In this document: piece after piece, positions 6,001 through 47,798 of the stretch
How positions within the stretch are numbered: position 1 is the stretch's first letter
Layout: every line of letters begins with the position of its first letter
IMG/VR virus record: IMGVR_UViG_3300023174_005338
Location: 248,001 to 312,000 of that record
DNA: 64,000 nucleotides
Reading direction: 5' to 3' (one strand)
Notes under the pieces: generated by a model
Told to the model about the DNA's origin: nothing
Seen by the model: only the letters and a program-made list of their open reading frames with translations
Database searches by the model: none
Program-made: the position numbers and the translations under genes

Positions 6001-9000
6001 GATATTGTGCAGTTAAAGGGTTAAAATCAACTTGAGTAAACAAGTCTGTGGCCTTGGTGGTTCCTTTGGTTTTGATAAATTGCTGATAAAGATTGACCTG
6101 GCTGGTGTCGTCAAGATCTAGATCTACCATGTACTGTCTTGGTTGAAAGCCAATCAAACCAAAGGCCAACAGGTCATTGTCGTTGTTGAGATTGGCAGTT
6201 TGCGTGTCATAGCTGTTGGCCAACTGATCAGCCTTGGTGGCCAAGTTTTGTAGCAATCCTTGTTCGATGCGATCATAGTTGCTCTTGAGCCAGTCGGTGT
6301 ATTCAAACTTGGATTTGGGTTGCACTATGTTGGCTGCTTGCCAATAGTTATTTTTATAAAGTACAATGTCGCCCTTGGTGTATTTTGTGTTGGGTTTCCA
6401 GGCTACTACATTGTTTTGATTCAAAATAAACCCTTGTGCATTCAACGTGCCATTCCAGTCTGTGGATGTGGCTGCTGACAGGCGCAAACGACTTTGTCTT
6501 TCGGCAGTGGTGGGATTGTAGATCAAGTCATTGAATATGGTTCGGTTGTCCAACACAATCATGTCTTCGTAATCTGTGTATTTCAATTGCAAATAGCTGA
6601 TGGTTTGGCTTCCCCCTGGAGCAGGATTGACCGTGAACGTGTTGCCAATTCTGCGGATGATCAAATTTTTTGCATCAAACGCTTTGCGATTTTGATCCAA
6701 TATCAAGTTTTCAGGAGTGTAGGTCACAATGCTATCAACCACGGCACCTGCACGGAACGATGCGGCCTGCGTGGCCGACGGATTCAAATTGATAATTGTG
6801 CCGGTGTCCCAGCCTTGATTGGCAAAATATAAAAATTCTTGCGCCATCTGCAACCAGTTTAAGGTGTAGCCATTTTCTTGAGCAGTGAATGACAGTCCTT
6901 GACTGGCCAGGTACTCGCCGTAGCTCAGTAAGAAATCAACCACGCCGGCCAAGTTTGTAAATGTATATCCATAAGGAATTTGTACCAATTTGCTGGTGTA
7001 CTGTGATGGAACTGTCACTGAAATATTTCCACCGCTCAAGGTCTGCTGAAGGCCGGTCACACGGCTGACCAAGGTAGGAAAATATGGATCTGTGGCATTA
7101 TATCCATACACAGTGTATCCACCCTCGACTACTTCCACAATCACAGCACTGTAGGATATTCTGTTGAATGGCTGATTTTTGTACAGCAACAGATTGTAAC
7201 TTTCTTCTGGGATCAACAAACTGCTGTTTTCACTGTTGGGACTGCTTTTTTCCAGGTACATGGACAAAGTCTGTGATGCAATAAAAGAGGCTGCGCGATA
7301 ACACAGGCGAACATCAAGATTGGCCAGGTCCGTGGTCAAGGCATCTGTGCTGTCTATGCCCAGTTGTTGGTTGTAGTCCACGATCCAGTTGATGTAGCTG
7401 GCCTTGCTGACACCGTTGCCGTAGACTTCGATGTTTTGTGGCTGTATTCTGTAACGTCCGTTGTAGAGATACTGATCAAACTCTGGGCTGTATTTGTACA
7501 AGTCTCGGTCAGCAAACAGGCTGAAAAATTCTGCTGGGCGTGTGAGAATCAACAAACGCATGACGGCAAATGGATAACTGCTACTCATCCACCAACTTGC
7601 TTCCACTGGGCCGCCGTCACCTACTTGCCAACTCTTTTGGAAACCTTGTGGGTTATAAGCACCCATCACACTGTAGAATGGTGGCAACAACTCGCCTTGA
7701 CTGCCGACTGGAATCACCGATGTCAACCCAGGACGACGATATTTTGGTATCACATAAGGAGCAACAGGATCTGCTACTAGACCTGCTTCAAGGTCGCCCC
7801 ATAGCACCAAATTGTCACTGGTGTAAGGTGTTGGACCGTAGCGGTCGGTCCACCACTCAGGCTGTTCCGAGAATCCCAGCATTTCCCAGGGCGTGGTGTT
7901 TGGCGACATTGTGTCGTAAAAATAACGATAGATTCCACGCCAGGCGCCAAGCAAGGGTTGTTGATCAAGTCTGTTGCCGGCTTGACTGTAGTTGTAGGTA
8001 AATTCATTGTCAGCTACGTAAGTTTGACTGGTGTAATCCAATTTATTGGCACCTACCCAGCTCAGGAAACTTTCACCCAAAATCTGATTGACTTCTGCTT
8101 GAGAATAATCTGTGGTCCTGAAAAAGCCAGGAATCACATCTTCAGCTACCAAGGGAGGTAGATTGCCATCGTTTTTGAGATTGCTAAAAATACGTTGTTC
8201 AAATTCTAACAACACTTGATCTCTGATGTCGCCAAAGGCTGTAGTTATGCTTCCATCATGCCCTTGTATGACCAAGGTAGGATTCACATAGTTGGTATCA
8301 TAAAAGATCCTGGGCTCGTACTTGGGATACAGTCCCAGTTTGGTTGGCGTGTTGGGTACAAAATTGCCGGCGGTGTCGGCATATTCATTGATGGTTACCA
8401 CGTCACCTACGGCCAGAGTTTGTAAAATAGTCAGCGTGGGTCCTTCGGTGCTGACCACATAACCAGTGTCACGAGTCAGCAAGATATTGTTGACGTATAC
8501 ACACAGTCCCAGATAGTTTGATGTGCTAAAGTCATAGGTCTGCACCGTATTGAACGTGTTGATTGTGATGGGGTTAACTGTGTAACTGTTTGAAGTAAAC
8601 ACTGTGCCTGTGGGCAACATGTCACTCCAGTAAAAAGGATTTAGATTGGTTCGGCCAACAGTGATTTGAGCTATGCTACGATCCAATAGTTCAGCCACAG
8701 TCCAATTGCCATAGTCGGATATACCAAACGTGGTCACGGCGTTGAGCAACTGTGATTTGAATTTAATATATTCAGCACTGTTGTAGGCCAAGGATGCAAA
8801 AATATCATAGTTGGCATCACGCATGAAATAGCCGGTCAAGGTCAAGGGCGAGCTTTGTTGCAGTATCTGCAGGCCATACGGTATGATATTGCCCAGATCT
8901 CTAGTGTTGTTGGCGCCTATGGAAGGTCCCGACAATGCAATGAGATTTTCAGCTATGGATGTGTAGTGATTGCGTATGGTGCCCAAAGTAAACTGATCGC

Positions 9001-12000
9001 TGTTGTTGTTCAAAGGATTGTTTGACAAATTTATGGGCACTTCATAGAAACCGGCCACGCTGACCTGATCACTCAGTACCGACACTTCGATCACGTCGCC
9101 GGGCGCATAGATAGTTAACAAATTGATTGTGGTGGTATTGGTACCAACCGTGTATTGATAATTGTCAGCGGACTGAAATTGTCCATTGATATAGATTTGT
9201 ACTGCCGGCACTGTTTGATTTTGATTCACTGCTACATCTAACAGCAGTGGATTTCCATCATAGCTAAACTGAAATTGTTGACGCACCAGGCTGGACGTGA
9301 CGGCTGTTTGCCATCCAATTTCTCTCTGAAAGTCAACGCGATTACTGTACTGTCTCACAAAACCTGTGCTCAAAGGCAAGGTTTGGCCACGGTTGTCTAT
9401 GGTATAGTTGAACGAATCTCGGTAGAAATTGTTGTCAAATACAATGTCACCAATGTTGGTAAGACTTAGGTAAGTTAAAGGAAAGCCCAATACCAAATCT
9501 GGATCGGCATTGCCAATGGCATAACTAAACAACGGACTTCCATTGAAATTAGAACTGGGGTATATGGCCTGATTGCCAAAACTTATGCCATTGCTGTCGT
9601 AGATGTCAAACAATGGTGGTTGGTTCACACTGATTTTTTGTTGTGCTTCAATCCACTCTACTCCATCATAGTAGTAAGATAATCCTTGTTCAGTGATACC
9701 ACTGAGTATGACCACAGTTTGGTCGACCAGTGCCGTGGCTATGGGAGTCAACACAATCACAGGTACATCTACTATGGTTGAGTCTTCGGCATTGGTATCG
9801 ATTATCACAAATTGCACCTGATAAACTGTGCGACGCACATCAATGTCTGTGTCTGCGGCAAAAATAATTGTGCTTCCATTGATCAGCGTGTAACCATCGA
9901 TGCTGTAGCCCAATGATCCATTTACATTGCTCAAGGCATCAGTCTGTGTGAAATCAATAATGTCTACTGGTGCCAGCGCCTGTGTGCCAAAATCAAACAA
10001 TCTTGTACCAGCGCGATATTCCAAGATTGGTCTACGGGCACGAAAATTGTTGTTCAAGACCGGAACAGTGTTGTTGTATTCTGCACTGGCAGTGATCACG
10101 TCAATGTGGAACCAACGATTGCTGCGGGTCCAGGCATTGAGATCTGGACTGGCACGGTTGATAGTCAAGTAATCAGGCACAAGGGGTTGATTGAGACTGC
10201 CATCAAAATTTCCAAAGTCATAGGGAGTGGTATCATAGGGAATGGTCAGGCTGTCTGTGTAAGTTTCAGGTGTGACATAGTTGGTCACCGGCAACAGTTG
10301 AATGGCTGTGCCTACCCCTTCCACATAGTATGTTTGATTTTGGTAAGTGGCAGGATATACATTGCCTCTAAATACTACCTTCATGCCGTTGCTGAACACG
10401 ACTCCATTGGGGCTAACGTAGTTGACCGATCCAATGATTTCATCAACATCAATGGTGTCGGACAGTTCCAGATCAATGAGATTAATGCGTCCAAAAATTT
10501 CTGGATCTGTGCCGTCTTGATAAAATAAAACATTTCTGTCGGCTGTCAACAAAGGAATTTGTTCAAAATATCCGGCGGCATTTTTGTACCAGCCGGTGCT
10601 GGAATATTCAGCGCCAAATCCCACTGCAAACTTGTTGTTGAGATCAACATTTTGTACAAATTGCAATGACATATAGGTACCACCACCCGCGGCAGTTAGA
10701 TACTGTATACGCCATACACTGTATTGTGTAGCTTGGTCTGTGATGTAGGTAGTTTGATCAAATGTTGTAGAATCAAAGGATCCTGTGCCGCTTTGTACAT
10801 TGCCCACATTAAGCAAAGGATCAAAGAATGTGGTCTGTTGCCAGCCGCCGGTCACAGGATTTGAATCTTGTGTGATAAATGCTATGGTGCGATTTTGTAA
10901 ATTTGTGATGCCATCAATGCCAGTGGGATTGGCCTCAAAGAATGGTTCTAAGAATTGATTGTTGATTTGATCAAACTGCAACGTGGTAATCAAATCCACC
11001 GTGCCAATGCTGGGCATGTTGAAGTAAAAATTCTGTGCGTCGGCCAAAGGCACATTAAAGGTTACTGTGCCAAGATCTTCACCGTTGTTGGTCACACCCA
11101 GTACATCTCTACTGCTGATGTTGGGAGTGGCAATTACTCGTCCGTCAATACCGGGGTCTGTTTGAATCCAAAATCCAGGACCTGTGCCCGGTGTGCCATC
11201 CACAATGTTGAGCTGGCCGCGCAGATTAAACTGCAGATCATTGGCGTAATACAGTGTGTCAGGAGCATCTTGTGGCACTGTGAATGTAATAAGTCCTGCA
11301 GCGGCTCCATTGTTGAATACGCCTTGGTTGTAGATGTCTGTGGTTCCGAGACTTGGAGCAGTCTTGATATAGAATGCCCAGGGAAAGGACTGAGTGAGAT
11401 TGAACACATAAGTATTGCCTCTGACCAGGGTCAAGGTGGGATTGGCAGAATAATCTATGTTCCAGCTGCTGGTATCATTGTTGGTCACTCGGAAATTTAC
11501 AGTTTCCTTGTTGTTCTGTGCCACATCAAAAGTATAGGTTCCGCCACGCACCAGTGTTATGGCGGGATTGTTGCCGGCCACGCCAGAAAAAGTATAGACT
11601 CCATTGGCTCGGGTTACCGTAAAATCATCGGTCAACGGAACCGAGGTGGCCGATACATCCACTGCCAATGGACCACCGGGCAACCAATAGTATTGTGCAT
11701 AGTTGACAAACTTGTCCAGTTCAACAAATGGATCCCAGGTATAGTAGTCGCTGGTGTACAATCTGTCAGCGTTGTTGGTAAACGCACCTTGTACCTGCAA
11801 GGCATCGTTGATGCCAGGATAGGTTATGGCATCAACTACTTTGCTGGTGTTGGCAGGATCAACTTGCACAACTCCAGGCTCGAGCTGATAGTCAGTGCGA
11901 GTTTTGGTAGGTTCTACCACGTACTGATCATTGGCATTGACTCCAGGACCAATACGTCGACCTATGAATCCTTGGGTCTGTGTGAATCTGGGATTTTGGA

Positions 12001-29916: not shown

Positions 29917-31680
29917 ATGATTCAAATAAAAAATCTCACAGTAAAAAACTTTATGAGCGTGGGCAACGCCACGCAAGGCATCGACTTTGATCGACGCGAC
30001 TTGACACTTGTGTTGGGCGAGAACTTGGATCTTGGTGGCGACGGAAGCCGCAACGGCACAGGTAAAACTACTATAATCAATGCTCTTAGCTACAGCTTGT
30101 ATGGGCAAGCATTAAGTAACATCCGCAAGGACAACTTAGTCAACAAAACCAACAACAAAAACATGTTGGTCAGTTTGGATTTCAGTGTGGACGGCAAAGA
30201 TTACCGGATTGAACGAGGCCGTAAACCCAACCTGCTGAGATTCTTTGTAAACAATCAAGAGCAAGTGGTCACAGACGAAGCACAAGGCGACAGCCGAGAA
30301 ACACAGGATGCCATTGAACATACCTTGGGCCTCAGTCACGACATGTTCAAACACATTCTGGCACTCAACACTTACACAGAACCGTTTCTGAGTCTCAAAG
30401 CCACAGATCAAAGAACCATCATTGAACAACTCCTGGGCATAACCATGCTGAGCGAGCGTGCCGATCGAATCAAAGAACACAACAGATCCACCAAAGAAGC
30501 CATACAGCAAGAAGAATTCCGTATTCGAGCTGTTCAAGAAGCCAATAAAAGGATAGAAGAACAGATTGAGGCTTTACGACGTAGACAGACATTATGGGTG
30601 ACTAAACATGAAGAAGAGATTACCAAACTCGAAACCGCGCTCGAAGAACTCAAAAAGATTGACATTGAAGCCGAGATTGCGGCCCACAAGGCGCACAAAG
30701 TATGGGATCAGAAGCGCAAGGACCTTAACGACCTGGCTGGACAGATCTCCCGCACGAAGCTTGATAAGGACCGCGAGAACAAAAGCATTGAGAAGCTTGG
30801 CAAGGAGATTGCGACACTTGAAGATCACACATGTCACACTTGCGGGCAGGCTTTCCACGACCATAAGCACCAACAGGTCCTGGCGGGTAAGCAGGCTGAT
30901 CTGGCAAGAGCGCGAGAAGCGTGCCAAGAACATACACAGCTCCTTTCAGAACTCGAGACTGCCCACACAGCCTTGGGCACGTTAGGGCGACCACCTGCTA
31001 TGTTCTATGATAGTGAAGAGGATGCCATACAACATCGTAGCAGCATGGCTGCCTTGCAAACTCAATTGACAAACAAACAGGCCGAAACAGATCCCTACGG
31101 CGAGCAGATAGCGGACATGCAAGGTCAGGCTTTGCAGGTAGTAAGCTATGACACACTCAATGAGCTGACCAGACTTCAGGAACATCAAGACTTCTTGCTC
31201 AAACTTTTGACCAGCAAGGATTCATTCATACGCAAAAAAATCATTGAACAGAATTTGAGTTATTTGAATGCCAGACTCACACACTACCTGGATAGGATTG
31301 GCCTGCCGCATACCGTGGTGTTCCAGAACGATTTGACTGTGAGCATCGAGGAGCTGGGTCGTGAGCTGGACTTTGACAATTTGAGTCGTGGCGAACGCAA
31401 CAGATTGATCTTGAGCATGAGCTGGGCCTTTCGTGATGTGTTTGAAAGCCTATACCAGCCCATCAATGTGCTGTTCATAGACGAAATGATTGATTCGGGC
31501 CTGGACACACAGGGTGTAGAAAATGCTCTTGCGTTGCTGAAGCACATGAGCCGCGAACGGCACAAGAGTATTTGGTTGGTCAGCCACAGAGATGAGCTAG
31601 CCGGAAGAGTTGAAAACATACTCCGAGTGGTCAAAGAAGGCGGCTTTACCAGTTACAACACGGATGTAGAAATTGCGTAG
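29917..31680 (+). CDS. gp46: Recombination endonuclease ATPase subunit (Rad50/SbcC-like)
   Basis: KNFMSVGN, Walker A NGTGKT, zinc hook CHTC, signature LSRGE, Walker B LFIDE, H-loop VSH. Confidence 0.92.
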   Translation: MIQIKNLTVKNFMSVGNATQGIDFDRRDLTLVLGENLDLGGDGSRNGTGKTTIINALSYSLYGQALSNIRKDNLVNKTNNKNMLVSLDFSVDGKDYRIERGRKPNLLRFFVNNQEQVVTDEAQGDSRETQDAIEHTLGLSHDMFKHILALNTYTEPFLSLKATDQRTIIEQLLGITMLSERADRIKEHNRSTKEAIQQEEFRIRAVQEANKRIEEQIEALRRRQTLWVTKHEEEITKLETALEELKKIDIEAEIAAHKAHKVWDQKRKDLNDLAGQISRTKLDKDRENKSIEKLGKEIATLEDHTCHTCGQAFHDHKHQQVLAGKQADLARAREACQEHTQLLSELETAHTALGTLGRPPAMFYDSEEDAIQHRSSMAALQTQLTNKQAETDPYGEQIADMQGQALQVVSYDTLNELTRLQEHQDFLLKLLTSKDSFIRKKIIEQNLSYLNARLTHYLDRIGLPHTVVFQNDLTVSIEELGRELDFDNLSRGERNRLILSMSWAFRDVFESLYQPINVLFIDEMIDSGLDTQGVENALALLKHMSRERHKSIWLVSHRDELAGRVENILRVVKEGGFTSYNTDVEIA

Positions 31681-32539
31681 AATACGAGTCTTACACATTG
31701 AACCCACCGACGTTTGTCAGGCTGCATGCCCGTTGTGTGCCCGAGAGACTGACCCAAACTTTAATAAAAGTTTAAAGCATCATCTCAGAGTAGAGCACAT
31801 ACAAAAACATTTTTCAGAACAAGTAATTTCCAAACTGGATAAAATGTTCATGTGTGGCAATTATGGTGATCCGGCTGCAGGCTACTATACCATGGACATC
31901 TACAACCACTTTAGAAAAGTCAATCCAGAAATTGTGTTGGGTATGAACACCAATGGTGCTGTGCAAAGCACGTTCTTTTGGCATGCGTTGGGACGATTGT
32001 TCAATCAGCCCAAAGATTATTGTGTGTTTAGCATAGACGGATTAGAGGATACCAATCACGTTTATCGTAAAAATGTCAATTGGGCCAAGCTAATGAGCAA
32101 CGTTCAAGCCTACATTGCCGCAGGTGGAAGTGCCCATTGGGACATGCTGGTGTACAAACACAATCAACATCAAGTGGATGCTTGCCAGCAACTGGCTCGT
32201 GACATGGGATTCAAGTGGTTCCGTGCCAAGGTCAGCAAGCGTGGATTCACTGATCATTTAGAATTTCCCATCGGGTGGCAACCGCCTGCGGTCAAGGCGG
32301 GGCCCATCAAATGCCATGTGATTAATGAAAAAAGCATGTACATTGATGCGCAAGGTCGTGCCAGTGCCTGTTGCTGGCTTGGTGCCACGCAACAAGATTT
32401 TGTCAAAGATGATTTGGCAACTGTAAAATTAACTTGGAAAACAGACACACCCAATCCGGTGTGTGTCAGTGCTTGTTCCACAAACAAAAATAAAACCGTA
32501 TTCCAAGACCAATGGCAACGCGAGGTACAACTGTGTTAG
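31673..32539 (+). CDS. Radical SAM protein with a C-terminal Cys-rich (Twitch/SPASM-like) region
   Basis: CQAACPLC (CxxxCxxC), CGNYGDP, NTNG, FSIDG; C-terminal KC…ACCW…CVSAC; TTG start overlaps the gp46 end. Confidence 0.85.
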   Translation: MRRIRVLHIEPTDVCQAACPLCARETDPNFNKSLKHHLRVEHIQKHFSEQVISKLDKMFMCGNYGDPAAGYYTMDIYNHFRKVNPEIVLGMNTNGAVQSTFFWHALGRLFNQPKDYCVFSIDGLEDTNHVYRKNVNWAKLMSNVQAYIAAGGSAHWDMLVYKHNQHQVDACQQLARDMGFKWFRAKVSKRGFTDHLEFPIGWQPPAVKAGPIKCHVINEKSMYIDAQGRASACCWLGATQQDFVKDDLATVKLTWKTDTPNPVCVSACSTNKNKTVFQDQWQREVQLC

Positions 32540-33543
32540 CCACCTGGCATTTTCATATCGAAATCAGTTCAAAGTGTACCCTGCGTTGCCCACGCTGTGC
32601 CAGACAAGAGGTTCCCGACAGTTTAGTAAACACTGAACTGGATTTAGAATTTTTTAAAAGAAACTTTACCGCAGAGTTTGTTCTTGACAATGTAGAAAAG
32701 ATCACATTTTGTGGTGACGACGGTGATCCTATCTATGCTCACGACCTTATACCAGTGATTCAATACATCAAGTCAATCAAACCTGTTGAGATTGTAGTTG
32801 TCACAAATGGATCACACAAGAAACCAGAATGGTGGCGTGAACTTGGTGGCGTGCTTAGTGAGCAAGATACTGTACACTTTAGCATCGACGGTTGGGACTA
32901 CCCAAGCAACAATCTGTATCGTGTCAACAGTGATTTCAACAGTATTGTCGACGGAATCACTGCACTACGATCAACCTCTGAGTGCCACCTTGTGTGGGCT
33001 GCCATTGTCTTTGGGTTCAATGAACACCAACTGGGCGCTATGAAAAATCATGCACGTTTGCTAGATATGGATGTATTTCAACTTACCAAGAGCACCAAGT
33101 TTGGCTCCGTTTATCTCTCCTACGGTCCAATCGATGAGCTAGAGCCCAGCCGGCCGTTTGTCAGCAGTTCACACAGATTTGAGAGAGATGTTACACCGAT
33201 AAGCTCGCGTGGACTCAATTCACAGACAAACACCAAGAACATACAATTATACAAATCTGCTGTAGAGATCAACGGTGTAAAACCCCTGTGTGAAATTGGC
33301 AACAAAGGACTTTATATTGACGCCCAAGGTAGATTATTCCCTTGCTGTTGGGTAGCAAACCGCTACAGTCACAATTCAGAATGGAAAGCTATTGCTAACA
33401 AATTTGATTTGAATCGTCGCACACTGGCCGACGCTGTAACTGACGATTTTTGGTCAACAACATTTAAAACCTTTGGGTGGCAAGAGTGCCAGACTAAGTG
33501 TGTAGCGAGCAGGGTAAATGAAAAATATGCAACTGAGTGGTAA
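32533..33543 (+). CDS. Second radical SAM protein, paralogous to the upstream one
   Basis: CTLRCPRC, FCGDDGDP, VTNGS, FSIDG; C-terminal LC…PCCW…CQTKC. Probable GTG start at 32533; the track uses the ATG at 32512. Confidence 0.85.
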   Translation: MLATWHFHIEISSKCTLRCPRCARQEVPDSLVNTELDLEFFKRNFTAEFVLDNVEKITFCGDDGDPIYAHDLIPVIQYIKSIKPVEIVVVTNGSHKKPEWWRELGGVLSEQDTVHFSIDGWDYPSNNLYRVNSDFNSIVDGITALRSTSECHLVWAAIVFGFNEHQLGAMKNHARLLDMDVFQLTKSTKFGSVYLSYGPIDELEPSRPFVSSSHRFERDVTPISSRGLNSQTNTKNIQLYKSAVEINGVKPLCEIGNKGLYIDAQGRLFPCCWVANRYSHNSEWKAIANKFDLNRRTLADAVTDDFWSTTFKTFGWQECQTKCVASRVNEKYATEW

Positions 33544-33561
33544 AATGATAAATTATAGTCC

Positions 33562-33990
33562 ATGGTATGGCTGTACGAAAACACTCCGATTGAACAACTA
33601 CCCGAAGACTGTGTTGGTTTTGTTTATTTGATCACAAATAACGTTACCGGCAGAAAGTACATTGGAAAAAAATTAGCAAAGTTTAGCAAGACCTCATATC
33701 GAGTAGTAAAATTAAAGAACGGCTACAAGAAACGTAAAAAGATAAGAAGCAAAATAGATTCAGACTGGCAACTATACTATGGCAGCAACGATCAACTCAA
33801 CCGAGACATTGCAGAGCTGGGCTCAGACAACTTCACAAGAGAAATATTGTTTTATTGCCGATCAAAAGCAGAATGCAGTTATGTTGAAGCACGCGAACAA
33901 TTCAATCATAAAGTATTGGAATCAGATGACTACTACAATGGACAGATTGTTTGCCGTATACACGGAAGTCATATAAAAAACAAAATTTAA
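33562..33990 (+). CDS. Small GIY-YIG-family nuclease
   Basis: GFVYLITNNVTGRKYIGKK, YYGS, FTREIL…E…YYN; 142 aa; single catalytic domain. Confidence 0.75.
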   Translation: MVWLYENTPIEQLPEDCVGFVYLITNNVTGRKYIGKKLAKFSKTSYRVVKLKNGYKKRKKIRSKIDSDWQLYYGSNDQLNRDIAELGSDNFTREILFYCRSKAECSYVEAREQFNHKVLESDDYYNGQIVCRIHGSHIKNKI

Positions 33991-33994
33991 ACTT

Positions 33995-34387
33995 AGATAG
34001 GCAACAACATGACTCTGCGGTAGGACTACCTACCCCCATTGAGGAACGGTGAGATACCCGGTCCAGATTCTTGGGTGTCAAAGGCAATTGCTAACTTAAG
34101 GCAACAAATGGTTTGAGCTCTGTGAAAAAGACACAACTCATGCTCATAGGACTTGGTTCTTCTCGGGTCACTAGGGTTCCGTTGATATGTGAAGCTTGAG
34201 TAGGGGGTACCGGTCAACCGCCTCCGCGTCGCGAGACAATCTCATTAGAAACGAAGTGACTGCTCCGACTCGGATAATGCGGCCTTTTTCACCCGGCAAC
34301 GGGTGAATTGTGACCACATGATCTGGATAATACGGAAAAAGAAATCATTGATGAGCGACAGCGAATCAATAGATCTCTAAGAGATCT
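33995..34387 (+). ncRNA. Candidate large structured non-coding RNA, family unrecognised, strand inferred
   Basis: About 400 nt without a credible ORF in a gene-dense genome; two GNRA-capped hairpins on the + strand and several 6-7-bp long-range complementarities (see findings). Confidence 0.55.
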
Positions 34388-34722
34388 CAGAACTGATCAG
34401 GAAAGTCTCGGAAAAGTGCGTGCTGAATGTTGCCACTCACAAACTGATTAAAACTTTTGTGTTTGGTTTCTAGTTCACCTTCAAGTGGTGCGACTCTTCG
34501 GAATGCCGCGTCCATTTGACCCATGTCCTTGAATTCCATTAGTATCATGAATTCAGGCATGTCTGCAATACTACGAAAACCCATCTTGCATCTAGTGATT
34601 CTATATGATTCCATTTTTCCTTCTGAGATCAAATGATCAAAGAAACTTTTCATTCCGTTGACCCAGTCCAGGTCTGAGATATTGCCTTCTTTGTCTGCCC
34701 AAATTGTATATAAGTCTGCCAT
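34387..34722 (-). CDS. DUF6614-like dimeric alpha/beta-barrel protein
   Basis: …HLISEGKMESYRITRCKMGF…EFMILMEFKDMGQMDAAF…LFRDFPD pattern; family recalled from memory. Confidence 0.5.
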   Translation of the reverse strand: MADLYTIWADKEGNISDLDWVNGMKSFFDHLISEGKMESYRITRCKMGFRSIADMPEFMILMEFKDMGQMDAAFRRVAPLEGELETKHKSFNQFVSGNIQHALFRDFPDQF

Positions 34723-35156
34723 TATTGTATAGGTCCTAAAATTTCAAAGCCTTCGAGGCCTTGTTTGTACAAGTGTGCTTGATCCAAGTACAAGTAGCTA
34801 AAACCGCGATCTCTGTAGATAGCACATTCGGTCTTCAAACTCTCAACCCCGAGTCTAGTTTTTGGATTGTGATATGTCCACGCAAACTGACTGGCCAATA
34901 CATTTTTATCATTCAGCCGCTTCATCAAACTAAAAGCCACCAGCTCATTGTGCTCTTTGTAGCCGATTACATCGGTCATGGCATCGGTGAACTGGCTGTC
35001 AAACAAGGGCATGACGCTGGCAAAGTGTTTGTAGATGCAGTAGGTCCTGTAGATGTCTTTGAGCTGTGCGATGTTGGGCTCACGTAGATATTCCCAGGCC
35101 ACTGTGGCCTTGTAGGTGGTTTTTCTCAAATCAATTCTAGCAAACTGATAGGTCAT
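34722..35156 (-). CDS. GNAT-fold protein resembling the C-terminal domain of Arg/Leu-tRNA-protein transferases (ATE1/Bpt)
   Basis: ELVAFSLM…SQFAWTYHNPKTRLGVESLKTECAIYRDRGFSYLYL parallels the ATE_C pattern (L.A….D…S.Y.F.DP…SLG..S.L.EI..A…G..Y.YL). Confidence 0.5.
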   Translation of the reverse strand: MTYQFARIDLRKTTYKATVAWEYLREPNIAQLKDIYRTYCIYKHFASVMPLFDSQFTDAMTDVIGYKEHNELVAFSLMKRLNDKNVLASQFAWTYHNPKTRLGVESLKTECAIYRDRGFSYLYLDQAHLYKQGLEGFEILGPIQ

Positions 35157-44914: not shown

Positions 44915-44961
44915 GTTGATTACAAGTTTAGGTAAAAGTGAGGTTTATCATAAATAATATT

Positions 44962-45720
44962 ATGAACAAATACAAAACTTGGTATAACAACATTACTGAA
45001 AACGCCAAAACTCGTATATCGGATGGATATACGGAACGGCATCACATTATCCCTCGAAGCCTAGGCGGATCTGACAGTAAAGAAAACTTAGTTGATCTCA
45101 CAGCCAGAGAACATTTCATATGTCATTGGTTACTGATTAAAATGCATACTGGCGAATCAAAAGCTAAAATGATTTATGCTCTAAATGGTATGAAACGAAA
45201 TGGCAGATTTAACGAAAGATATGAAACCAAAATAACAAGTAGAGTTTATGAAAAGCTCAAACAAGAATTTTCTCTTATACACTCTGCCAACATGAAAGGT
45301 CGCACTGCCCACAATAAAGGTGTTCCTGCCACAGAAGAACAAAAAGAAAAAAATAGGCTGGCCGCAAAAGGTAGGAAGATGAGTCCAGAATCAATCGCGA
45401 AAGGTGTAGCCAAGCGCCGCGGACAAAAAAGAACAGAAGAGCAAAAGGCAAAAATTGCAAAATCAGTAAAAGAAGCACTTGCTAAAAACCCAAGAGGCCC
45501 AATGAGCGATGAACATAAGTTAAAAAGGTCATTAGCATCATTGGGTAAACCAAAGCCAGCTGGGCATACTGAAAGAAGACTTGCGACTCTTGCCAAGCAG
45601 TTGGCAGAAGGCACGCATTATAGTCAACAAAAAAAGACCTGTCCACACTGCGGAGTAGTTGCAAGTAAAGGTCCTTACACAAGGTATCACGGACCTCACT
45701 GCCAGGCCCTCAAACCTTAA
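44962..45720 (+). CDS. Free-standing HNH homing endonuclease with NUMOD3-like basic repeats
   Basis: YTERHHIIPRSLGGSDSKENLVDLTAREHFICHWLL; basic repeats (MSPESIAK, RTEEQKAKI, MSDEHKLK); C-terminal CPHC; AT-rich. ATG at 44962 preferred. Confidence 0.85.
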   Translation: MNKYKTWYNNITENAKTRISDGYTERHHIIPRSLGGSDSKENLVDLTAREHFICHWLLIKMHTGESKAKMIYALNGMKRNGRFNERYETKITSRVYEKLKQEFSLIHSANMKGRTAHNKGVPATEEQKEKNRLAAKGRKMSPESIAKGVAKRRGQKRTEEQKAKIAKSVKEALAKNPRGPMSDEHKLKRSLASLGKPKPAGHTERRLATLAKQLAEGTHYSQQKKTCPHCGVVASKGPYTRYHGPHCQALKP

Positions 45721-46862: not shown

Positions 46863-46921
46863 GGTTCTATTTAATTTGTGCATAGATCTCCAAAATATTT
46901 GTTGTTGAATAAATACTTGTC

Positions 46922-46978
46922 AACGCAATCCTGCGTTTTATGCGGCTCTAACCCAGCCGCGTAGTCGCTAGAACCGAC
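46922..46978 (+). promoter_or_regulatory. Structured 5' leader with three tandem hairpins
   Basis: AACGCA/TGCGTT, TATGCGGCT/AGCCGCGTA and GTCG/CGAC stems between TAAATA (46910-15) and the AAGGAG Shine-Dalgarno. Confidence 0.5.
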
Positions 46979-47006
46979 ATTGGGCTTCTTTAAGGAGAAA
47001 ACAAAA

Positions 47007-47798
47007 ATGGGACGTCCTCTCAAAATTAAAAAAATTATCGAAACTGGTTATAATTCTACTACCGGTGCAAACCCTGGTGTTGACATCGGTTTCAATGCAC
47101 TAACTAGTTTGACAGCACCTGTGTACCCTAGTCCTGTATGGGATTCGGCCACAGAATATCTAGGCGTGGTTGGCGGAGCTCAGCCTCCTACCGTGGCCAG
47201 CACCAACTATCCTATCGTCAAGTGCCGTGTGTTTGTCACAGGTTTTGCCGAAGCAGATGGTCAAATTATTCGTCAAAAAGGCGCACACAAGTTCTTGGTA
47301 GCAGATACAACCAGCAGAACAGCACTGGTGGCCAATCAGGCCTATCGCATTACTACAGTAGGCAACACAGACTGGGCCAGCTATGGTGCTCCCAACGCAC
47401 AGATTGGCACAATCTTCACAGCCACAGCGGCCTTGGGCAATACAGGCACAGGTCGTGTCAACGCGGTTGGCATCTGTGTGTTGGCCAACGATTTGAGCCC
47501 CACAGCCGGCAACATGAGCATCAGCTACTTTGATAATTCATCCACCGAAGTTGCAATCAGCAAGCTAACCAACAAGTTCTTGCAGAATTTCAACGGCGGC
47601 GAAGCTGGTGGCAATGCCGATACTGGCAACGTTTGGGATTACACACAAGTGGTCAACAACGTTACCTATGCTGCCAACTTCTTCAGCGACGAAGGGGTCA
47701 CAGCCAAATCGGGTGCAGAAGTTGACACCTGGGCAGGCACCAGCCAGCTCAGCAGCGGCAACTTGGATCTTGCTATTGTAGAAAACTACAATACTTAA
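47007..47798 (+). CDS. Probable virion structural protein (263 aa)
   Basis: AAGGAG Shine-Dalgarno before ATG 47007 (MGRPLKIKK…); late box upstream; T/G/N/A-rich. Confidence 0.6.
   Translation: MGRPLKIKKIIETGYNSTTGANPGVDIGFNALTSLTAPVYPSPVWDSATEYLGVVGGAQPPTVASTNYPIVKCRVFVTGFAEADGQIIRQKGAHKFLVADTTSRTALVANQAYRITTVGNTDWASYGAPNAQIGTIFTATAALGNTGTGRVNAVGICVLANDLSPTAGNMSISYFDNSSTEVAISKLTNKFLQNFNGGEAGGNADTGNVWDYTQVVNNVTYAANFFSDEGVTAKSGAEVDTWAGTSQLSSGNLDLAIVENYNT

What the first reader, a model, noticed from the sequence alone, without database searches (positions are those of the whole stretch)
33562..34387. Unrecognised ~400-nt structured RNA directly behind a stand-alone GIY-YIG nuclease
Seen in sequence: this is the longest non-coding stretch in the window. 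Hairpins: TTCACCCG-GCAA-CGGGTGAA (34288-307), GTC-GCGA-GAC (34228-37), ATTGAT/ATCAAT (34347-70), AGATCTC-TAA-GAGATCT (34371-87). Long-range complements: TACCCCC 34031-37 with GGGGGTA 34203-09; TCCAGAT 34062-68 with ATCTGGA 34321-27; TGAGAT 34050-55 with ATCTCA 34239-44; GGTCAC 34166-71 with GTGACC 34310-15; AACGG 34045-49 with CCGTT 34179-83; GTGTC 34075-79 with GACAC 34130-34. GGATAAT(G/A)CGG occurs twice. Several pairings cross, implying pseudoknots or alternative folds, and both GNRA loops read on the + strand. I do not recognise tmRNA, RNase P, tRNA or group I/II cores. The upstream nuclease has no obvious separate DNA-binding domain, only a Lys/Arg-rich insert. Inference: a new large ncRNA or ribozyme class, possibly forming an RNP with the nuclease (speculative).
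Basis: partly seen in the sequence, partly recalled or inferred. Interest (0 to 1): 0.8.

Follow-up and report, generated by a model that had tools for sequence, protein, structure and literature searches.

The report
Large structured phage RNA with twin address motifs
The 396-base gap behind the small nuclease gene encodes a real, strongly structured RNA of unknown function that hundreds of freshwater T4-like phages share, and its oddest feature is two short single-stranded motifs that always change together.

Summary
The non-coding stretch 33991-34386 is real and encodes a plus-strand structured RNA of about 395 nt. In 94 unique relatives, 76 base pairs are 97.7% Watson-Crick or wobble. Compensatory changes occur in 44 of them, against 2-12 in shifted controls. 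G-U cells outnumber A-C cells 752 to 43.

None of its six long-range pairings is supported. A different pseudoknot is.

No Rfam family matches the window. Sister RNAs share its 3' half and carry Rfam Polynucleobacter-1 (RF01718, function unknown) as their 5' domain.

The RNA sits at a fixed place in a wide clade of T4-like phages, between the gp46 operon and the convergent baseplate genes. It lies just behind a small nuclease gene, either a GIY-YIG or an unrelated PDDEXK_15.

The GIY-YIG family occurs in 459 cultured phage records; three inspected lack the RNA, and a DNA search found it in none. A guide-RNA partnership is therefore unlikely.

The striking feature is two 7-mers flanking a hairpin. 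They are identical in 118 of 118 unique RNAs although the sequence varies, and I found no partner in cis.

My best guess is a trans-acting RNA with two identical recognition sites. Function remains unproven.

The parts
33562..33990 (+). Upstream gene: 142-aa stand-alone GIY-YIG nuclease (context and probable co-transcript)
   Evidence: Pfam PF19835 SegE_GIY-YIG at 7e-34, covering the whole profile. phrog_447 also matches. A sigma-70-like promoter match lies at 33518-33546.
33991..34390 (+). The structured RNA as a whole (about 395 nt; ends inferred from conservation, not mapped)
   Evidence: nhmmer model match 33990-34395. Conserved at 76-95% identity in about 160 loci. The structure has 76 pairs that are 97.7% Watson-Crick or wobble, 44 of them with compensatory changes. 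GU+UG cells number 752 against 43 AC+CA, which points to the plus strand.
33993..34005 (+). Conserved 5' leader UUAGAUAGGCAAC, with no supported pairing partner
   Evidence: Nearly invariant in alignment A1. RNAalifold pairs it with the second 7-mer region, but this is not supported: there are 11 C-A mismatches in 53 sequences, and the duplex test gives z -0.4.
34019..34034 (+). H2 hairpin (34019-23 with 34030-34)
   Evidence: All pairs are 100% Watson-Crick or wobble, with up to 4 pair types per position.
34035..34075 (+). H3 helix CCCA/UGGG (34035-38 with 34072-75), enclosing H4
   Evidence: CG changes to GC or GU, and AU changes to GC, in compensating fashion.
34043..34064 (+). H4 hairpin GGAACGG/CCGGUCC with loop UGAGAUAC
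   Evidence: The inner pair CG changes to AU or UA, and GC changes to UA.
34088..34104 (+). H5 hairpin UUGCU/GGCAA
   Evidence: RNAalifold helix. Mostly invariant, with one compensated UA-to-CG change.
34110..34144 (+). H6 two-part hairpin (34110-17 with 34137-44; 34121-23 with 34133-35)
   Evidence: UA/GC/CG at model pair 129-156, GC/AU at 131-154, UA/CG at 136-151.
34150..34169 (+). H7 hairpin (34150-56 with 34163-69), whose loop 34157-63 forms the pseudoknot
   Evidence: Pairs are 99-100% Watson-Crick or wobble, many of them G-U, so the plus strand is the one read.
34247..34256 (+). Pseudoknot partner of the H7 loop (AGAAACGAAG pairing with UUCUUCU)
   Evidence: Model pairs 173-180 with 268-275. 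Pair counts include UA 52 / CG 34 / UG 7 at 175-273 and UA 64 / CG 11 / UG 7 / GC 4 at 179-269. Most relatives have AUUUAUUAU pairing with AUAAUAAAU, while the window's clade has a UUC/GAA version.
34197..34244 (+). Px helix UGAG/CUCA (34197-200 with 34241-44), enclosing H9 and H10
   Evidence: Pair 34197-34244 is UA in 47 and AU in 46 of 94 sequences.
34203..34225 (+). H9: GGGGG/CCUCC plus inner CGG/CCG. This is the most conserved core, GGUACCGGUCAACCGCC.
   Evidence: The outer pair is GC in 65 and AU in 29. The rest is invariant. It is shared by types A, B and many type C RNAs.
34228..34237 (+). H10: variable-length hairpin
   Evidence: The middle pair shows AU 48, GC 19, UA 13, CG 9 and UG 4. 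Stem length varies.
34268..34279 (+). Twin motif copy 1: ACUC + GGAUAAU (34272-78) + G, in the loop of a local hairpin (CCG 34265-67 with CGG 34280-82)
   Evidence: The 7-mer is identical to copy 2 in 118 of 118 unique RNAs. The flanks are complementary to each other at z -7.1 against permuted partners.
34288..34307 (+). H12: central stable hairpin between the twins (UUCACCCG GCAA CGGGUGAA)
   Evidence: The stem covaries (UUCACCG, UUCACCC, UUCUCCC, UUUGCCC). G-U pairs in L146 and L147 point to the plus strand.
34321..34332 (+). Twin motif copy 2: AUCU + GGAUAAU (34325-31) + A, single-stranded
   Evidence: No supported pairing partner.
34347..34370 (+). Hairpin with a tandem G-A internal loop (AUUGAU-GA-GC ... 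GC-GA-AUCAAU)
   Evidence: Four of the six outer pairs covary with 3-5 pair types. The inner GC changes to AU. The UGAGC...GCGAA core is conserved in types A, B and C.
34371..34387 (+). Terminal hairpin, terminator-like in relatives
   Evidence: The stem sequence is replaced wholesale in relatives while pairing is kept, and it is followed by U-rich sequence in many relatives. The consensus terminator scan did not call it in the window.

Best explanation
What is shown. The gap encodes a genuine plus-strand RNA of about 395 nt. It folds on its own into about 15 helices, and a pseudoknot ties its 5' and 3' halves together. It belongs to a phage-specific superfamily whose members keep a common 3' domain and swap their 5' domains. 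The 3' domain runs in this order: the GGUACCGG.CAACCGCC core, a variable hairpin, twin motif 1, a stable hairpin, twin motif 2, an A-rich linker, a G-A hairpin and a terminal hairpin. One alternative 5' domain is the Rfam motif Polynucleobacter-1. The RNA occupies a fixed genomic slot, at the end of the gp46 (Rad50-like)/nuclease operon, facing the convergent baseplate genes.

What is inferred. It is probably made as the tail of the nuclease transcript, because no promoter of its own was found, and it probably ends at its own terminal hairpins.

Proposed mechanism (inferred). The RNA acts in trans as a scaffold or decoy. Its working surface would be two exposed copies of the same 7-nt sequence, one in a hairpin loop and one in a single-stranded linker. 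These would be read base by base by one partner that is bound twice, or by two copies of that partner. The nuclease gene next to it would be a neighbour in the operon, not its protein partner.
For: The structure is real:
- RNAalifold finds 86 pairs, 27 of them compensatory.
- The curated set of 76 pairs is 97.7% Watson-Crick or wobble, with 44 compensatory pairs against 2-12 in shifted controls.
- The pseudoknot and the Px helix come out of mutual-information analysis.
- Strand: 752 GU/UG cells against 43 AC/CA cells.

The superfamily is modular:
- The 3' half is shared with type B, whose 5' half scores 86-118 bits on RF01718.
- L250 combines Poly-1 with a type-A H6 module.
- Type C RNAs keep the same 3' order.

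The genomic slot is fixed: gp46, then the nuclease, then a 450-650-nt gap, then convergent p96 and hub genes, in 65 loci.

The twin motifs:
- 118 of 118 are identical, against 25 expected if the two copies varied independently.
- At least 18 A/G switches on the tree, with 11 of 11 independent pairs changing the same way.
- Rarer variants (GCAUAAU, AGAUCAA, AGACGAA, ACAUGAA) are also present in both copies.
- No other column in the RNA tracks them; the best mutual information elsewhere is 0.43 bit against about 1.0 between the two copies.
- No complement lies within -900/+600 nt, or within +-2.5 kb in type C loci.
- Copy 1 is presented in a hairpin loop.

Independence from the nuclease.

Presence in RNA libraries: contigs from three metatranscriptomes cover 34043-34306 at about 98-99% identity, while the flanking genes are barely covered in two of them.
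Against: - No partner has been identified, so the trans-acting step is pure inference.
- Simple Watson-Crick reading by a third strand should tolerate G-U wobble, and so should leave some mixed G/A pairs. None is seen. The constraint looks stricter than ordinary base pairing.
- Part of the A/G pattern could reflect linkage of two sites 53 nt apart under recombination. My rough estimate is that the chance of seeing no split pair is about 0.08.
- In some type C RNAs the twins agree over only 5-6 nt, and one (L373) shows no clear twin.
- Near-universal adjacency to a nuclease gene argues for some link. In RNA-first loci, 112 of 113 with enough upstream DNA have the GIY-YIG gene.
- The transcription evidence consists of contigs from RNA libraries, which can contain DNA.
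Confidence: 0.42

Rival explanations
1. Operon neighbour or homing target only. The RNA gene is a conserved landmark. Small nuclease genes of two families have settled next to it, either as free-standing homing-type endonucleases that cut the conserved RNA gene in rivals (as T4 SegB does in the tRNA cluster), or simply as interchangeable occupants of the last slot of the gp46 operon. On this view the RNA's own function is unrelated to them.
For: - Two unrelated nuclease families occupy the same position.
- One or two extra ORFs sit between the GIY-YIG gene and the RNA in 23 of 113 loci.
- The RNA core is conserved exactly over 52 nt in more than 120 contigs, which is the kind of sequence homing enzymes target.
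- An HNH endonuclease lies elsewhere in the window.
Against: - Homing genes are usually patchy, but here a nuclease is almost always present.
- The 142-aa GIY-YIG protein lacks a DNA-binding domain and is a widely conserved gene of T4-like cyanophages, not a sporadic one.
- This view explains the linkage but says nothing about what the RNA does. It is compatible with the best explanation.
Confidence: 0.2
2. Ribonucleoprotein with the adjacent nuclease. The RNA binds the small nuclease and supplies target recognition through the twin 7-mers, or it restrains a toxic enzyme in the way an RNA antitoxin does.
For: - The RNA starts 0-10 nt after the nuclease stop codon in 89 of 113 loci.
- The nuclease has no separate nucleic-acid-binding domain.
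- An unrelated nuclease takes the same place in other clades.
- The twin motifs are variable and look like guides.
Against: - The GIY-YIG family is in 459 cultured phage records. None of the three inspected has the RNA, and blastn of the RNA against all phage records finds nothing.
- No GIY-YIG residue covaries with the 7-mer state; the highest mutual information is 0.45 bit, which is at the level of phylogenetic background.
- The same 7-mers (AGAUAAU, AGAUGAU, GGAUGAUG, ACAUGAA) occur behind both nuclease families.
- L250 has the RNA with no nuclease nearby.
- Seven nucleotides with about ten variants is far less diversity than known guide RNAs show.
Confidence: 0.1
3. Jump or copy-choice signal. 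The two identical 7-10-mers at the foot of a hairpin let a polymerase, carrying a nascent strand of about that length, move from one copy to the other. The result would be an RNA isoform without the hairpin, or repeated copies of the 53-nt unit. Coronavirus TRS sites, DRT2-type template jumping and the take-off and landing sites of T4 gene 60 follow the same logic.
For: - Strict identity without a pairing partner is exactly what re-annealing of a nascent strand requires.
- The identity length of 7-10 nt and the spacing of 49-66 nt around a stable hairpin fit this picture.
Against: - No reverse transcriptase was seen among the neighbouring genes I annotated or in the shared gene order of the 65 type C loci. 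The rest of the genome was not checked.
- No conserved reading frame runs into the first copy. The spacer before it is 6, 7 or 8 nt long, so ribosomal hopping is excluded.
- The sparse RNA-library contigs show no junction joining 34279 to 34332.
Confidence: 0.08
4. Cis-acting 3' end element. On this view it is an elaborate terminator, insulator or stabiliser that stops early and middle transcription from running antisense into the baseplate genes, or one that controls the stability of the nuclease mRNA.
For: - It always sits at the point where two transcription units converge.
- It ends in two hairpins. On the minus strand the A-rich linker would read as a U-tract after a hairpin.
- No promoter of its own was found.
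Against: - About 330 nt of pseudoknotted, covarying structure upstream of the hairpins is far more than termination needs.
- The hairpins stay with the RNA when other genes separate it from the convergent gene.
- L250 shows the RNA in a different context.
- This view does not explain the twin motifs.
Confidence: 0.1
5. DNA-level element. On this view it is a replication origin, with direct repeats, an inverted repeat and an A/T-rich tract.
For: - Direct repeats 53 bp apart flank an inverted repeat and are followed by an A-rich run.
- In T4, oriF lies near the baseplate genes. This comes from my own knowledge and was not tested here.
Against: - Pairing is maintained through G-U on the plus strand only, 752 cells against 43. 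This includes the central hairpin, with G-U pairs in L146 and L147. That points to a folded single strand of one polarity, not to duplex DNA.
Confidence: 0.04

Closest known systems
Polynucleobacter-1 RNA motif (Rfam RF01718; Weinberg et al. 2010, PMC2864571)
   Same: - It is found in the same clade of freshwater phage contigs, in the same genomic slot and on the same strand.
- RNAs that contain it continue into a 3' domain homologous to window 34176-34387.
- It too is an orphan candidate with unknown function.
   Different: - The window's RNA does not contain the motif, with no hit even at E<=10. Its 5' 180 nt fold differently, as helices H2-H7.
- The Rfam model covers only 141 nt and misses the roughly 280-nt conserved remainder, including the twin motifs.
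TwoAYGGAY RNA (Rfam RF01731), as described in bioRxiv 10.64898/2026.09.22.753630
   Same: - It is an RNA defined by two exposed copies of one short motif. That motif has been proposed as a pair of binding sites for one protein, Csr/Rsm.
- The G-type twins here read YGGAU.
   Different: - There the motif is fixed. Here it varies and the two copies change together.
- Half of the RNAs here have AGA instead of GGA, which Csr-type proteins are not expected to bind. This last point is from my own knowledge.
- There was no Rfam hit.
GOLLD and ROOL large ornate RNAs (bioRxiv 10.1101/2024.12.08.627333, listed)
   Same: - They are large, intricately folded RNAs of unknown function. They are often phage-borne and were first seen in lake metagenomes.
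   Different: - There is no sequence or model match.
- This RNA is smaller, about 395 nt.
- Oligomer formation was not tested.
- This RNA sits behind a nuclease gene rather than beside tRNA genes.
Nuclease-adjacent guide RNAs (the omega RNAs of IscB and TnpB; HEARO in Rfam)
   Same: - A structured RNA of several hundred nt starts at the 3' end of a small nuclease gene.
   Different: - The nuclease families differ: GIY-YIG or PD-(D/E)XK here, not RuvC/HNH.
- There was no Rfam HEARO hit.
- There is no long variable guide at either end.
- The nuclease family exists widely without the RNA.
Matched-site jump systems: the T4 gene 60 take-off and landing codons and the coronavirus TRS (from my own knowledge)
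   Same: - Two short sequences must be identical to each other, whatever that sequence is. In gene 60 they are about 50 nt apart, around a hairpin, in a T4-type phage.
   Different: - Here no reading frame leads into the site.
- The identity spans 7-10 nt, not 3.
- No jumped product has been observed.

Membership tests
Polynucleobacter-1 RNA (RF01718) | Covariance-model score at or above the gathering threshold of 37 bits | tested here: not met
   The window has no hit at the gathering threshold and none at E<=10 on 33400-34600. Sister loci score 61-118 bits.
Polynucleobacter-1 RNA (RF01718) | Same locus and same downstream sequence as bona fide members | tested here: met
   The 3' half (model positions about 205-417) aligns to the sequence following RF01718 hits. 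Ninety-nine of 118 Poly-1 loci have the GIY-YIG gene upstream and this 3' domain downstream.
Group I intron carrying a GIY-YIG gene | Interrupts a host gene, with exons on both sides on the same strand | tested here: not met
   The upstream gene ends with its own stop codon 18 nt before the nuclease start codon. Downstream genes are on the opposite strand.
Group I intron carrying a GIY-YIG gene | Conserved catalytic core recognised by the Rfam intron models | tested here: not met
   No Intron_gpI or group II hit even at E<=10. The Rfam model does not cover all subgroups, so this test is weaker than the exon test.
tRNA, tmRNA, RNase P | Detection by ARAGORN or by Rfam models | tested here: not met
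   ARAGORN finds 0 genes in the window. Rfam finds none.
IscB/TnpB omega RNA (HEARO-type guide RNA) | Rfam model match and a RuvC- or HNH-type partner nuclease | tested here: not met
   No Rfam hit. The neighbouring nuclease is SegE-type GIY-YIG or PDDEXK_15.
IscB/TnpB omega RNA (HEARO-type guide RNA) | The nuclease depends on the RNA, shown by co-occurrence across the protein family | tested here: not met
   There are 459 phage records with the protein. The three inspected lack the RNA, and blastn of the RNA against the phage collection finds nothing.
Translational bypass element (T4 gene 60 type) | An open reading frame entering the take-off site in a fixed frame | tested here: not met
   In the window a stop codon lies 5 codons upstream in the GGA frame. 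The spacer before copy 1 is 6, 7 or 8 nt in relatives, so no frame is kept.
Template RNA of a defence-type reverse transcriptase (DRT2-like jumping) | A reverse transcriptase gene in the same system | not tested
   None was seen among the neighbouring genes I annotated, and the shared gene order gp46, nuclease, RNA, p96/hub leaves no room for one beside the RNA. The loci were not scanned for reverse transcriptase genes, and only 64 kb of the 337-kb genome was available.
Box C/D (K-turn) RNA | C and D boxes forming a K-turn, with a model score above threshold | tested here: not met
   There are only weak snoRNA hits of 15-20 bits against thresholds of 39-101. The UGAUGA...GA segments lie in a helix whose flanks pair with each other, and the internal loop is 2 by 2 to 2 by 4 nt rather than a 3-nt bulge.

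The most novel reading that the evidence does not exclude
The twin identical 7-10-mers are a programmable element of a new kind. One possibility is a two-site guide, by which the RNA (with some effector) recognises two copies of one nucleic-acid sequence. The other is a pair of matched donor and acceptor sites for a polymerase jump. Either way, the sequence would be free to change as long as both copies change together, and this RNA superfamily would be a new functional class in T4-like phages.
Probability: 0.15. Interest if true: 0.85.

Novelty: new variant of a known kind. Interest (0 to 1): 0.64.

Why it matters
- It turns an orphan 141-nt Rfam motif into one module of a much larger RNA of 400-600 nt. 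That RNA is a fixed feature of a broad group of freshwater T4-like and jumbo phages, seen here in more than 300 contigs.
- Large, pseudoknotted RNAs with unknown roles are rare, and several of the known ones have turned out to have unexpected architectures.
- The twin motifs give a clean, testable handle. Two short sequences must match each other but not any fixed consensus. That points either to base-by-base reading by a partner not yet found, or to a copy or jump mechanism.
- Practically, the curated structure and the alignments are enough to build covariance models for types A, B and C, and so to annotate this gap in phage genomes.

Tried and rejected
1. Known RNA families. I ran Rfam at the gathering threshold on the whole window and at E<=10 on the region, plus ARAGORN. 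Nothing was found on the region.
2. Decayed C-terminal domain of the nuclease, or a hidden ORF. I rejected this. The protein covers the whole Pfam profile and is 142 aa in hundreds of phages. The region shows stem covariation and indels that are not multiples of three.
3. These are contradicted or unsupported by covariation.
4. A hammerhead or K-turn reading of UGAUGAGC...GCGAAA. I rejected this because the flanking strands pair with each other.
5. A cis partner for the 7-mers. I tried mutual information over all model columns, complement scans of flanks allowing G-U, and scans of type C loci. None was found. The recurrent AUUAUUU hit is merely the coding sequence for REILFYC.
6. The one exact complement in the window, at 45046. 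It is the HHIIP codons of an HNH endonuclease and does not covary in other phages.
7. Co-evolution of the 7-mers with GIY-YIG residues. None was found.
8. Pairing between the two spacers that precede the twins. This was not supported.
9. Cultured relatives. blastn of the region against 50,697 phage records gave no match.
10. Cellular genomes. The pattern scan of 185,579 species genomes found only 4 MAG contigs. At least three of them carry the GIY-YIG gene beside the RNA, and the fourth is too short to tell.
11. A loose detector for 'twin repeat plus hairpin'. It fired as often in control sequence, so I tightened it. The strict version gives 22 of 53 hits against 13 of 146 in controls.
12. Supplementary tables of the 2023 catalogue of viral structured RNAs. 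They were not available, so I could not check whether this motif is listed there.
Full report
**1. What is at the coordinates**

The window is part of a 337-kb uncultured freshwater phage contig (IMGVR_UViG_3300023174_005338). It has T4-type genes. The Rad50-like gp46 is 52% identical to that of Pseudomonas phage PA5oct, and a baseplate hub gene is present.

ORF 33562-33990 (+) is a 142-aa protein that covers the whole Pfam SegE_GIY-YIG profile. It is followed by 396 nt without a credible ORF, up to the stop codon of a convergent DUF6614 gene at 34387-34722 (-).

Rfam at gathering thresholds, Rfam at E<=10 and ARAGORN find nothing on the stretch. On its own the sequence folds only slightly better than shuffles, with z -2.4 on the plus strand and -2.7 on the minus strand. 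The window alone would therefore not make the case.

**2. Relatives show a real RNA**

A protein-based search with the nuclease fetched 80 loci. About half of them carry a copy of the 400-nt stretch at 76-95% identity.

- RNAalifold on 25 of these gives 86 pairs, 27 with compensatory changes.
- An nhmmer alignment of 94 unique full-length copies, analysed by mutual information, confirmed most helices. It corrected two of them and added a pseudoknot.
- The curated set of 76 pairs is 97.7% Watson-Crick or wobble. Compensatory double changes occur in 44 pairs, against 2-12 when partners are shifted by 1-3 columns.
- G-U cells outnumber A-C cells 752 to 43, so the folded strand is the plus strand.

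In window coordinates the helices are:

| Helix | Coordinates |
|---|---|
| H2 | 34019-23 / 34030-34 |
| H3 | 34035-38 / 34072-75 |
| H4 | 34043-49 / 34058-64 |
| H5 | 34088-92 / 34100-04 |
| H6 | 34110-17 / 34137-44, and 34121-23 / 34133-35 |
| H7 | 34150-56 / 34163-69 |
| Pseudoknot | H7 loop 34157-63 with 34247-56 |
| Px | 34197-200 / 34241-44 |
| H9 | 34203-07 / 34221-25, and 34211-13 / 34218-20 |
| H10 | 34228-30 / 34235-37 |
| H12 | 34288-95 / 34300-07 |
| G-A hairpin | 34347-52 / 34365-70 |
| Terminal hairpin | 34371-77 / 34381-87 |

**3.

- The four local hairpins and the duplicated GGATAAT(G/A)CGG are correct.
- None of the six long-range complements is supported. Each segment belongs to another helix. 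Most of those helices covary; H9 inner never varies, and one segment (UGAGAU) is the unpaired H4 loop.
- The GNRA loops are not conserved.
- 'Longest non-coding stretch' could not be verified.
- The inference that pseudoknots exist is right, but with different partners.

**4. Relation to a known motif**

More distant nuclease loci (70-78% protein identity) match only the 3' half of the model. Their 5' half is the Rfam family Polynucleobacter-1, at 86-118 bits against a threshold of 37. That family is a 141-nt candidate from the 2010 survey by Weinberg and colleagues, listed as 'Burkholderiales, fresh water/estuary'. No function is known, and it is the only paper in the library that mentions it.

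A DNA-pattern scan for Poly-1 returned 118 loci. Of these, 99 have the GIY-YIG gene upstream and the shared 3' domain downstream. The Rfam motif is therefore one 5' module of a much longer RNA. The window carries a different 5' module (H2-H7) and fails the RF01718 membership test. Locus L250 mixes Poly-1 with an H6-like module of the window type, which shows that the modules are exchangeable.

**5. Linkage to nucleases**

A scan with a 52-nt RNA pattern, independent of any protein, gave 120 loci. Of the 113 with enough upstream DNA, 89 have the GIY-YIG gene directly upstream. In 23 it lies 0.1-2.2 kb upstream with one or two ORFs in between. One locus has none within the 575 nt available.

The GIY-YIG family is nevertheless present in 459 cultured phage records: T4-like cyanophages, Methylophilales phage Melnitz, Sinorhizobium phiM12-type phages and others. 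In Melnitz-3, phiN3 and P-HM1 it is followed directly by other genes, with no nhmmer match to the RNA. blastn of the region against all 50,697 phage records finds nothing.

In locus L298 the gene in front of the RNA is instead a PDDEXK_15 endonuclease. Fetching 80 loci with that protein gave these results:

- By nhmmer or core-pattern match, at least 27 have the RNA on the same strand downstream, most of them starting right after the gene.
- Many of the rest carry diverged 'type C' RNAs with the same 3' order of elements.
- All share one gene order: gp46, optional radical-SAM genes, the nuclease, a 450-650-nt gap, then convergent p96 and baseplate hub genes.
- Rfam recognises only the Poly-1 piece, and only in some of them.
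- L250 has the RNA with no nuclease nearby.

I read this as follows. The RNA occupies the end of the gp46 operon in a wide phage clade, and the last protein gene of that operon is a small nuclease of one of two families. The linkage is strong, but what I could check suggests the nuclease does not need the RNA.

**6. The twin motifs**

Copy 1 is ACUC-GGAUAAU-G (34268-79). Copy 2 is AUCU-GGAUAAU-A (34321-32). They flank hairpin H12.

- Across 118 unique type A and B RNAs the 7-mer takes seven forms: GGAUAAU, AGAUGAU, AGAUAAU, GGAUGAU, AGAUGAA, GGAUGAA and GGAUGAG. It is identical in both copies in all 118, where 25 would be expected if the copies varied independently.
- Rarer forms (GCAUAAU, AGAUCAA, AGACGAA, ACAUGAA) are also present in both copies.
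- On a tree built without these columns, the first position switched between A and G at least 18 times. All 11 independent, well-supported contrasts changed both copies the same way (sign test p about 0.001).
- No other column of the RNA tracks them.
- No complement lies within -900/+600 nt.
- No GIY-YIG residue tracks them.
- Copy 1 sits in the loop of a local hairpin, as flank complementarity shows (z -7.1). Copy 2 has no supported partner.
- In type C RNAs the twins have quite different sequences: GGCAAUGU, CAGCAAUGGU, GCAUCAUG, CAUCGUCAAG and GGAAAAAGU. They are again duplicated 49-66 nt apart around a long hairpin. In some members, however, identity shrinks to GGCAA, and one member shows none.
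- The same 7-mers occur behind both nuclease families.

A caveat applies to the tree count. Two sites only 53 nt apart travel together under recombination, so part of the A/G pattern could be linkage. The independent double changes in the rare variants argue that identity is itself selected.

**7. Expression**

No promoter-like site lies directly upstream of the RNA. One precedes the nuclease gene.

Contigs from three metatranscriptomes cover 34043-34306 at about 98-99% identity, while the neighbouring genes are almost uncovered in two of them. This is suggestive only, because RNA libraries can contain DNA.

**8. Interpretation**

Shown:
- It is a plus-strand, pseudoknotted RNA of about 395 nt.
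- It belongs to a modular phage superfamily related to Polynucleobacter-1.
- It sits at a fixed operon-end position.
- Its two copies of a short motif obey an identity rule.

Inferred:
- It is co-transcribed with the nuclease gene and ends at its own hairpins.
- It acts in trans, and the two exposed 7-mers are read by one partner bound twice or by two copies of a partner.

I rate this at about 0.4. No partner is known, and the strictness of the identity rule exceeds what simple base pairing with wobble would impose.

The rivals are:
- A pure neighbour or homing-target relationship, which is compatible with the best explanation.
- An RNP with the nuclease, which is weakened by section 5 and by the lack of co-variation.
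- A polymerase jump between matched sites. This is attractive for the identity rule, but no polymerase and no product is in evidence.
- A cis-acting 3'-end element.
- A DNA-level origin, which the one-strand G-U pattern contradicts.

**9. Novelty and score**

The window's RNA matches no curated family. It is, however, a sister form of RNAs that contain a catalogued motif, so I class it as a new variant of a known (and itself unexplained) kind. It may also be listed without a name in the 2023 catalogue of more than ten thousand viral structured-RNA candidates, which I could not check.

I score interest at 0.64. The structure is unusually well supported. The family is large and fixed in position in an important phage group. 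The twin-motif rule is a specific, unexplained and testable oddity.

Noticed in passing
window 46921-47009 (+): A full-length match to the Rfam motif freshwater-2 (RF02980, 65.8 bits against a threshold of 49.9). Its 3' end, with AAGGAG and AUG, runs into ORF 46980-47798. It looks like a 5' leader of that gene.
   Followed up: no
window 44938-45720 (+): A 260-aa ORF with an HNH-type motif (ERHHIIPRSLGGSD), probably a free-standing homing-type endonuclease. It holds the window's only exact complement of the 7-mer. That complement is just the HIIP codons.
   Followed up: partly
window 31673-32539 and 32512-33543 (+): Two paralogous radical-SAM genes in tandem, overlapping by 28 nt, sit between gp46 and the nuclease. 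Relatives have one, two or none here, or unrelated ORFs of about 340 and 258 aa with no Pfam match.
   Followed up: partly
window 34722-35156 (-); L013 5199-5879 (+): Small proteins with weak similarity to the C-terminal domain of arginyl-tRNA-protein transferase (ATE_C) lie close to the RNA. The window's scores 18 bits, below the cut-off. The one in L013 scores 26.2 bits against a cut-off of 25. A tRNA-dependent transferase fold next to a structured RNA may or may not be a coincidence.
   Followed up: no
phage records H16-H55 (for example NC_015280.1, NC_028945.1): The 142-aa GIY-YIG family is annotated 'NAD synthetase' in many GenBank phage records and in phrog_447. Pfam places it in SegE_GIY-YIG, so the name looks like a propagated misannotation.
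   Followed up: partly
L201-L204 (MAG contigs labelled Flavobacteriales, Haliscomenobacter x2, Bifidobacterium): These are the only hits for the RNA in 185,579 species genomes. At least three carry the GIY-YIG gene beside the RNA, and the two Haliscomenobacter contigs also carry DUF6614. They are probably phage contigs binned with bacterial genomes. At best they are a hint about the host.
   Followed up: partly
window 34000-04, 34083-87, 34100-04: GGCAA occurs three times in the 5' domain (AGGCAAC, AAGGCAAU, AAGGCAAC), next to the self-complementary GCAAUUGC at 34084-91. In type C RNAs the twin motif itself is GGCAAU. Whether these facts are connected is unknown.
   Followed up: no
window 1-11000: There are several long stretches without any ORF of 70 aa or more: 8008-9926, 3423-4881 and 5194-6259. 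The first holds a run of 35-69-aa plus-strand ORFs, which is typical of small early genes. I did not check these stretches for RNAs beyond the Rfam gathering scan.
   Followed up: partly
L250 7515-8100 (+): This is a family member with no nuclease beside it. It lies downstream of a winged-helix gene and upstream of a D-Ala-D-Ala carboxypeptidase and an Fe-S assembly gene. Its 5' half is Poly-1, and it also contains an H6 module like the window's.
   Followed up: partly
window 34257-60 and 34311-14; 34213-17: UGAC precedes each twin motif by 10-11 nt. GGUCA, in the invariant core loop, could pair with either UGAC. In many relatives a second GUCA follows copy 1. This suggests alternative pairings, but the bases do not vary, so it cannot be tested by covariation.
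   Followed up: partly
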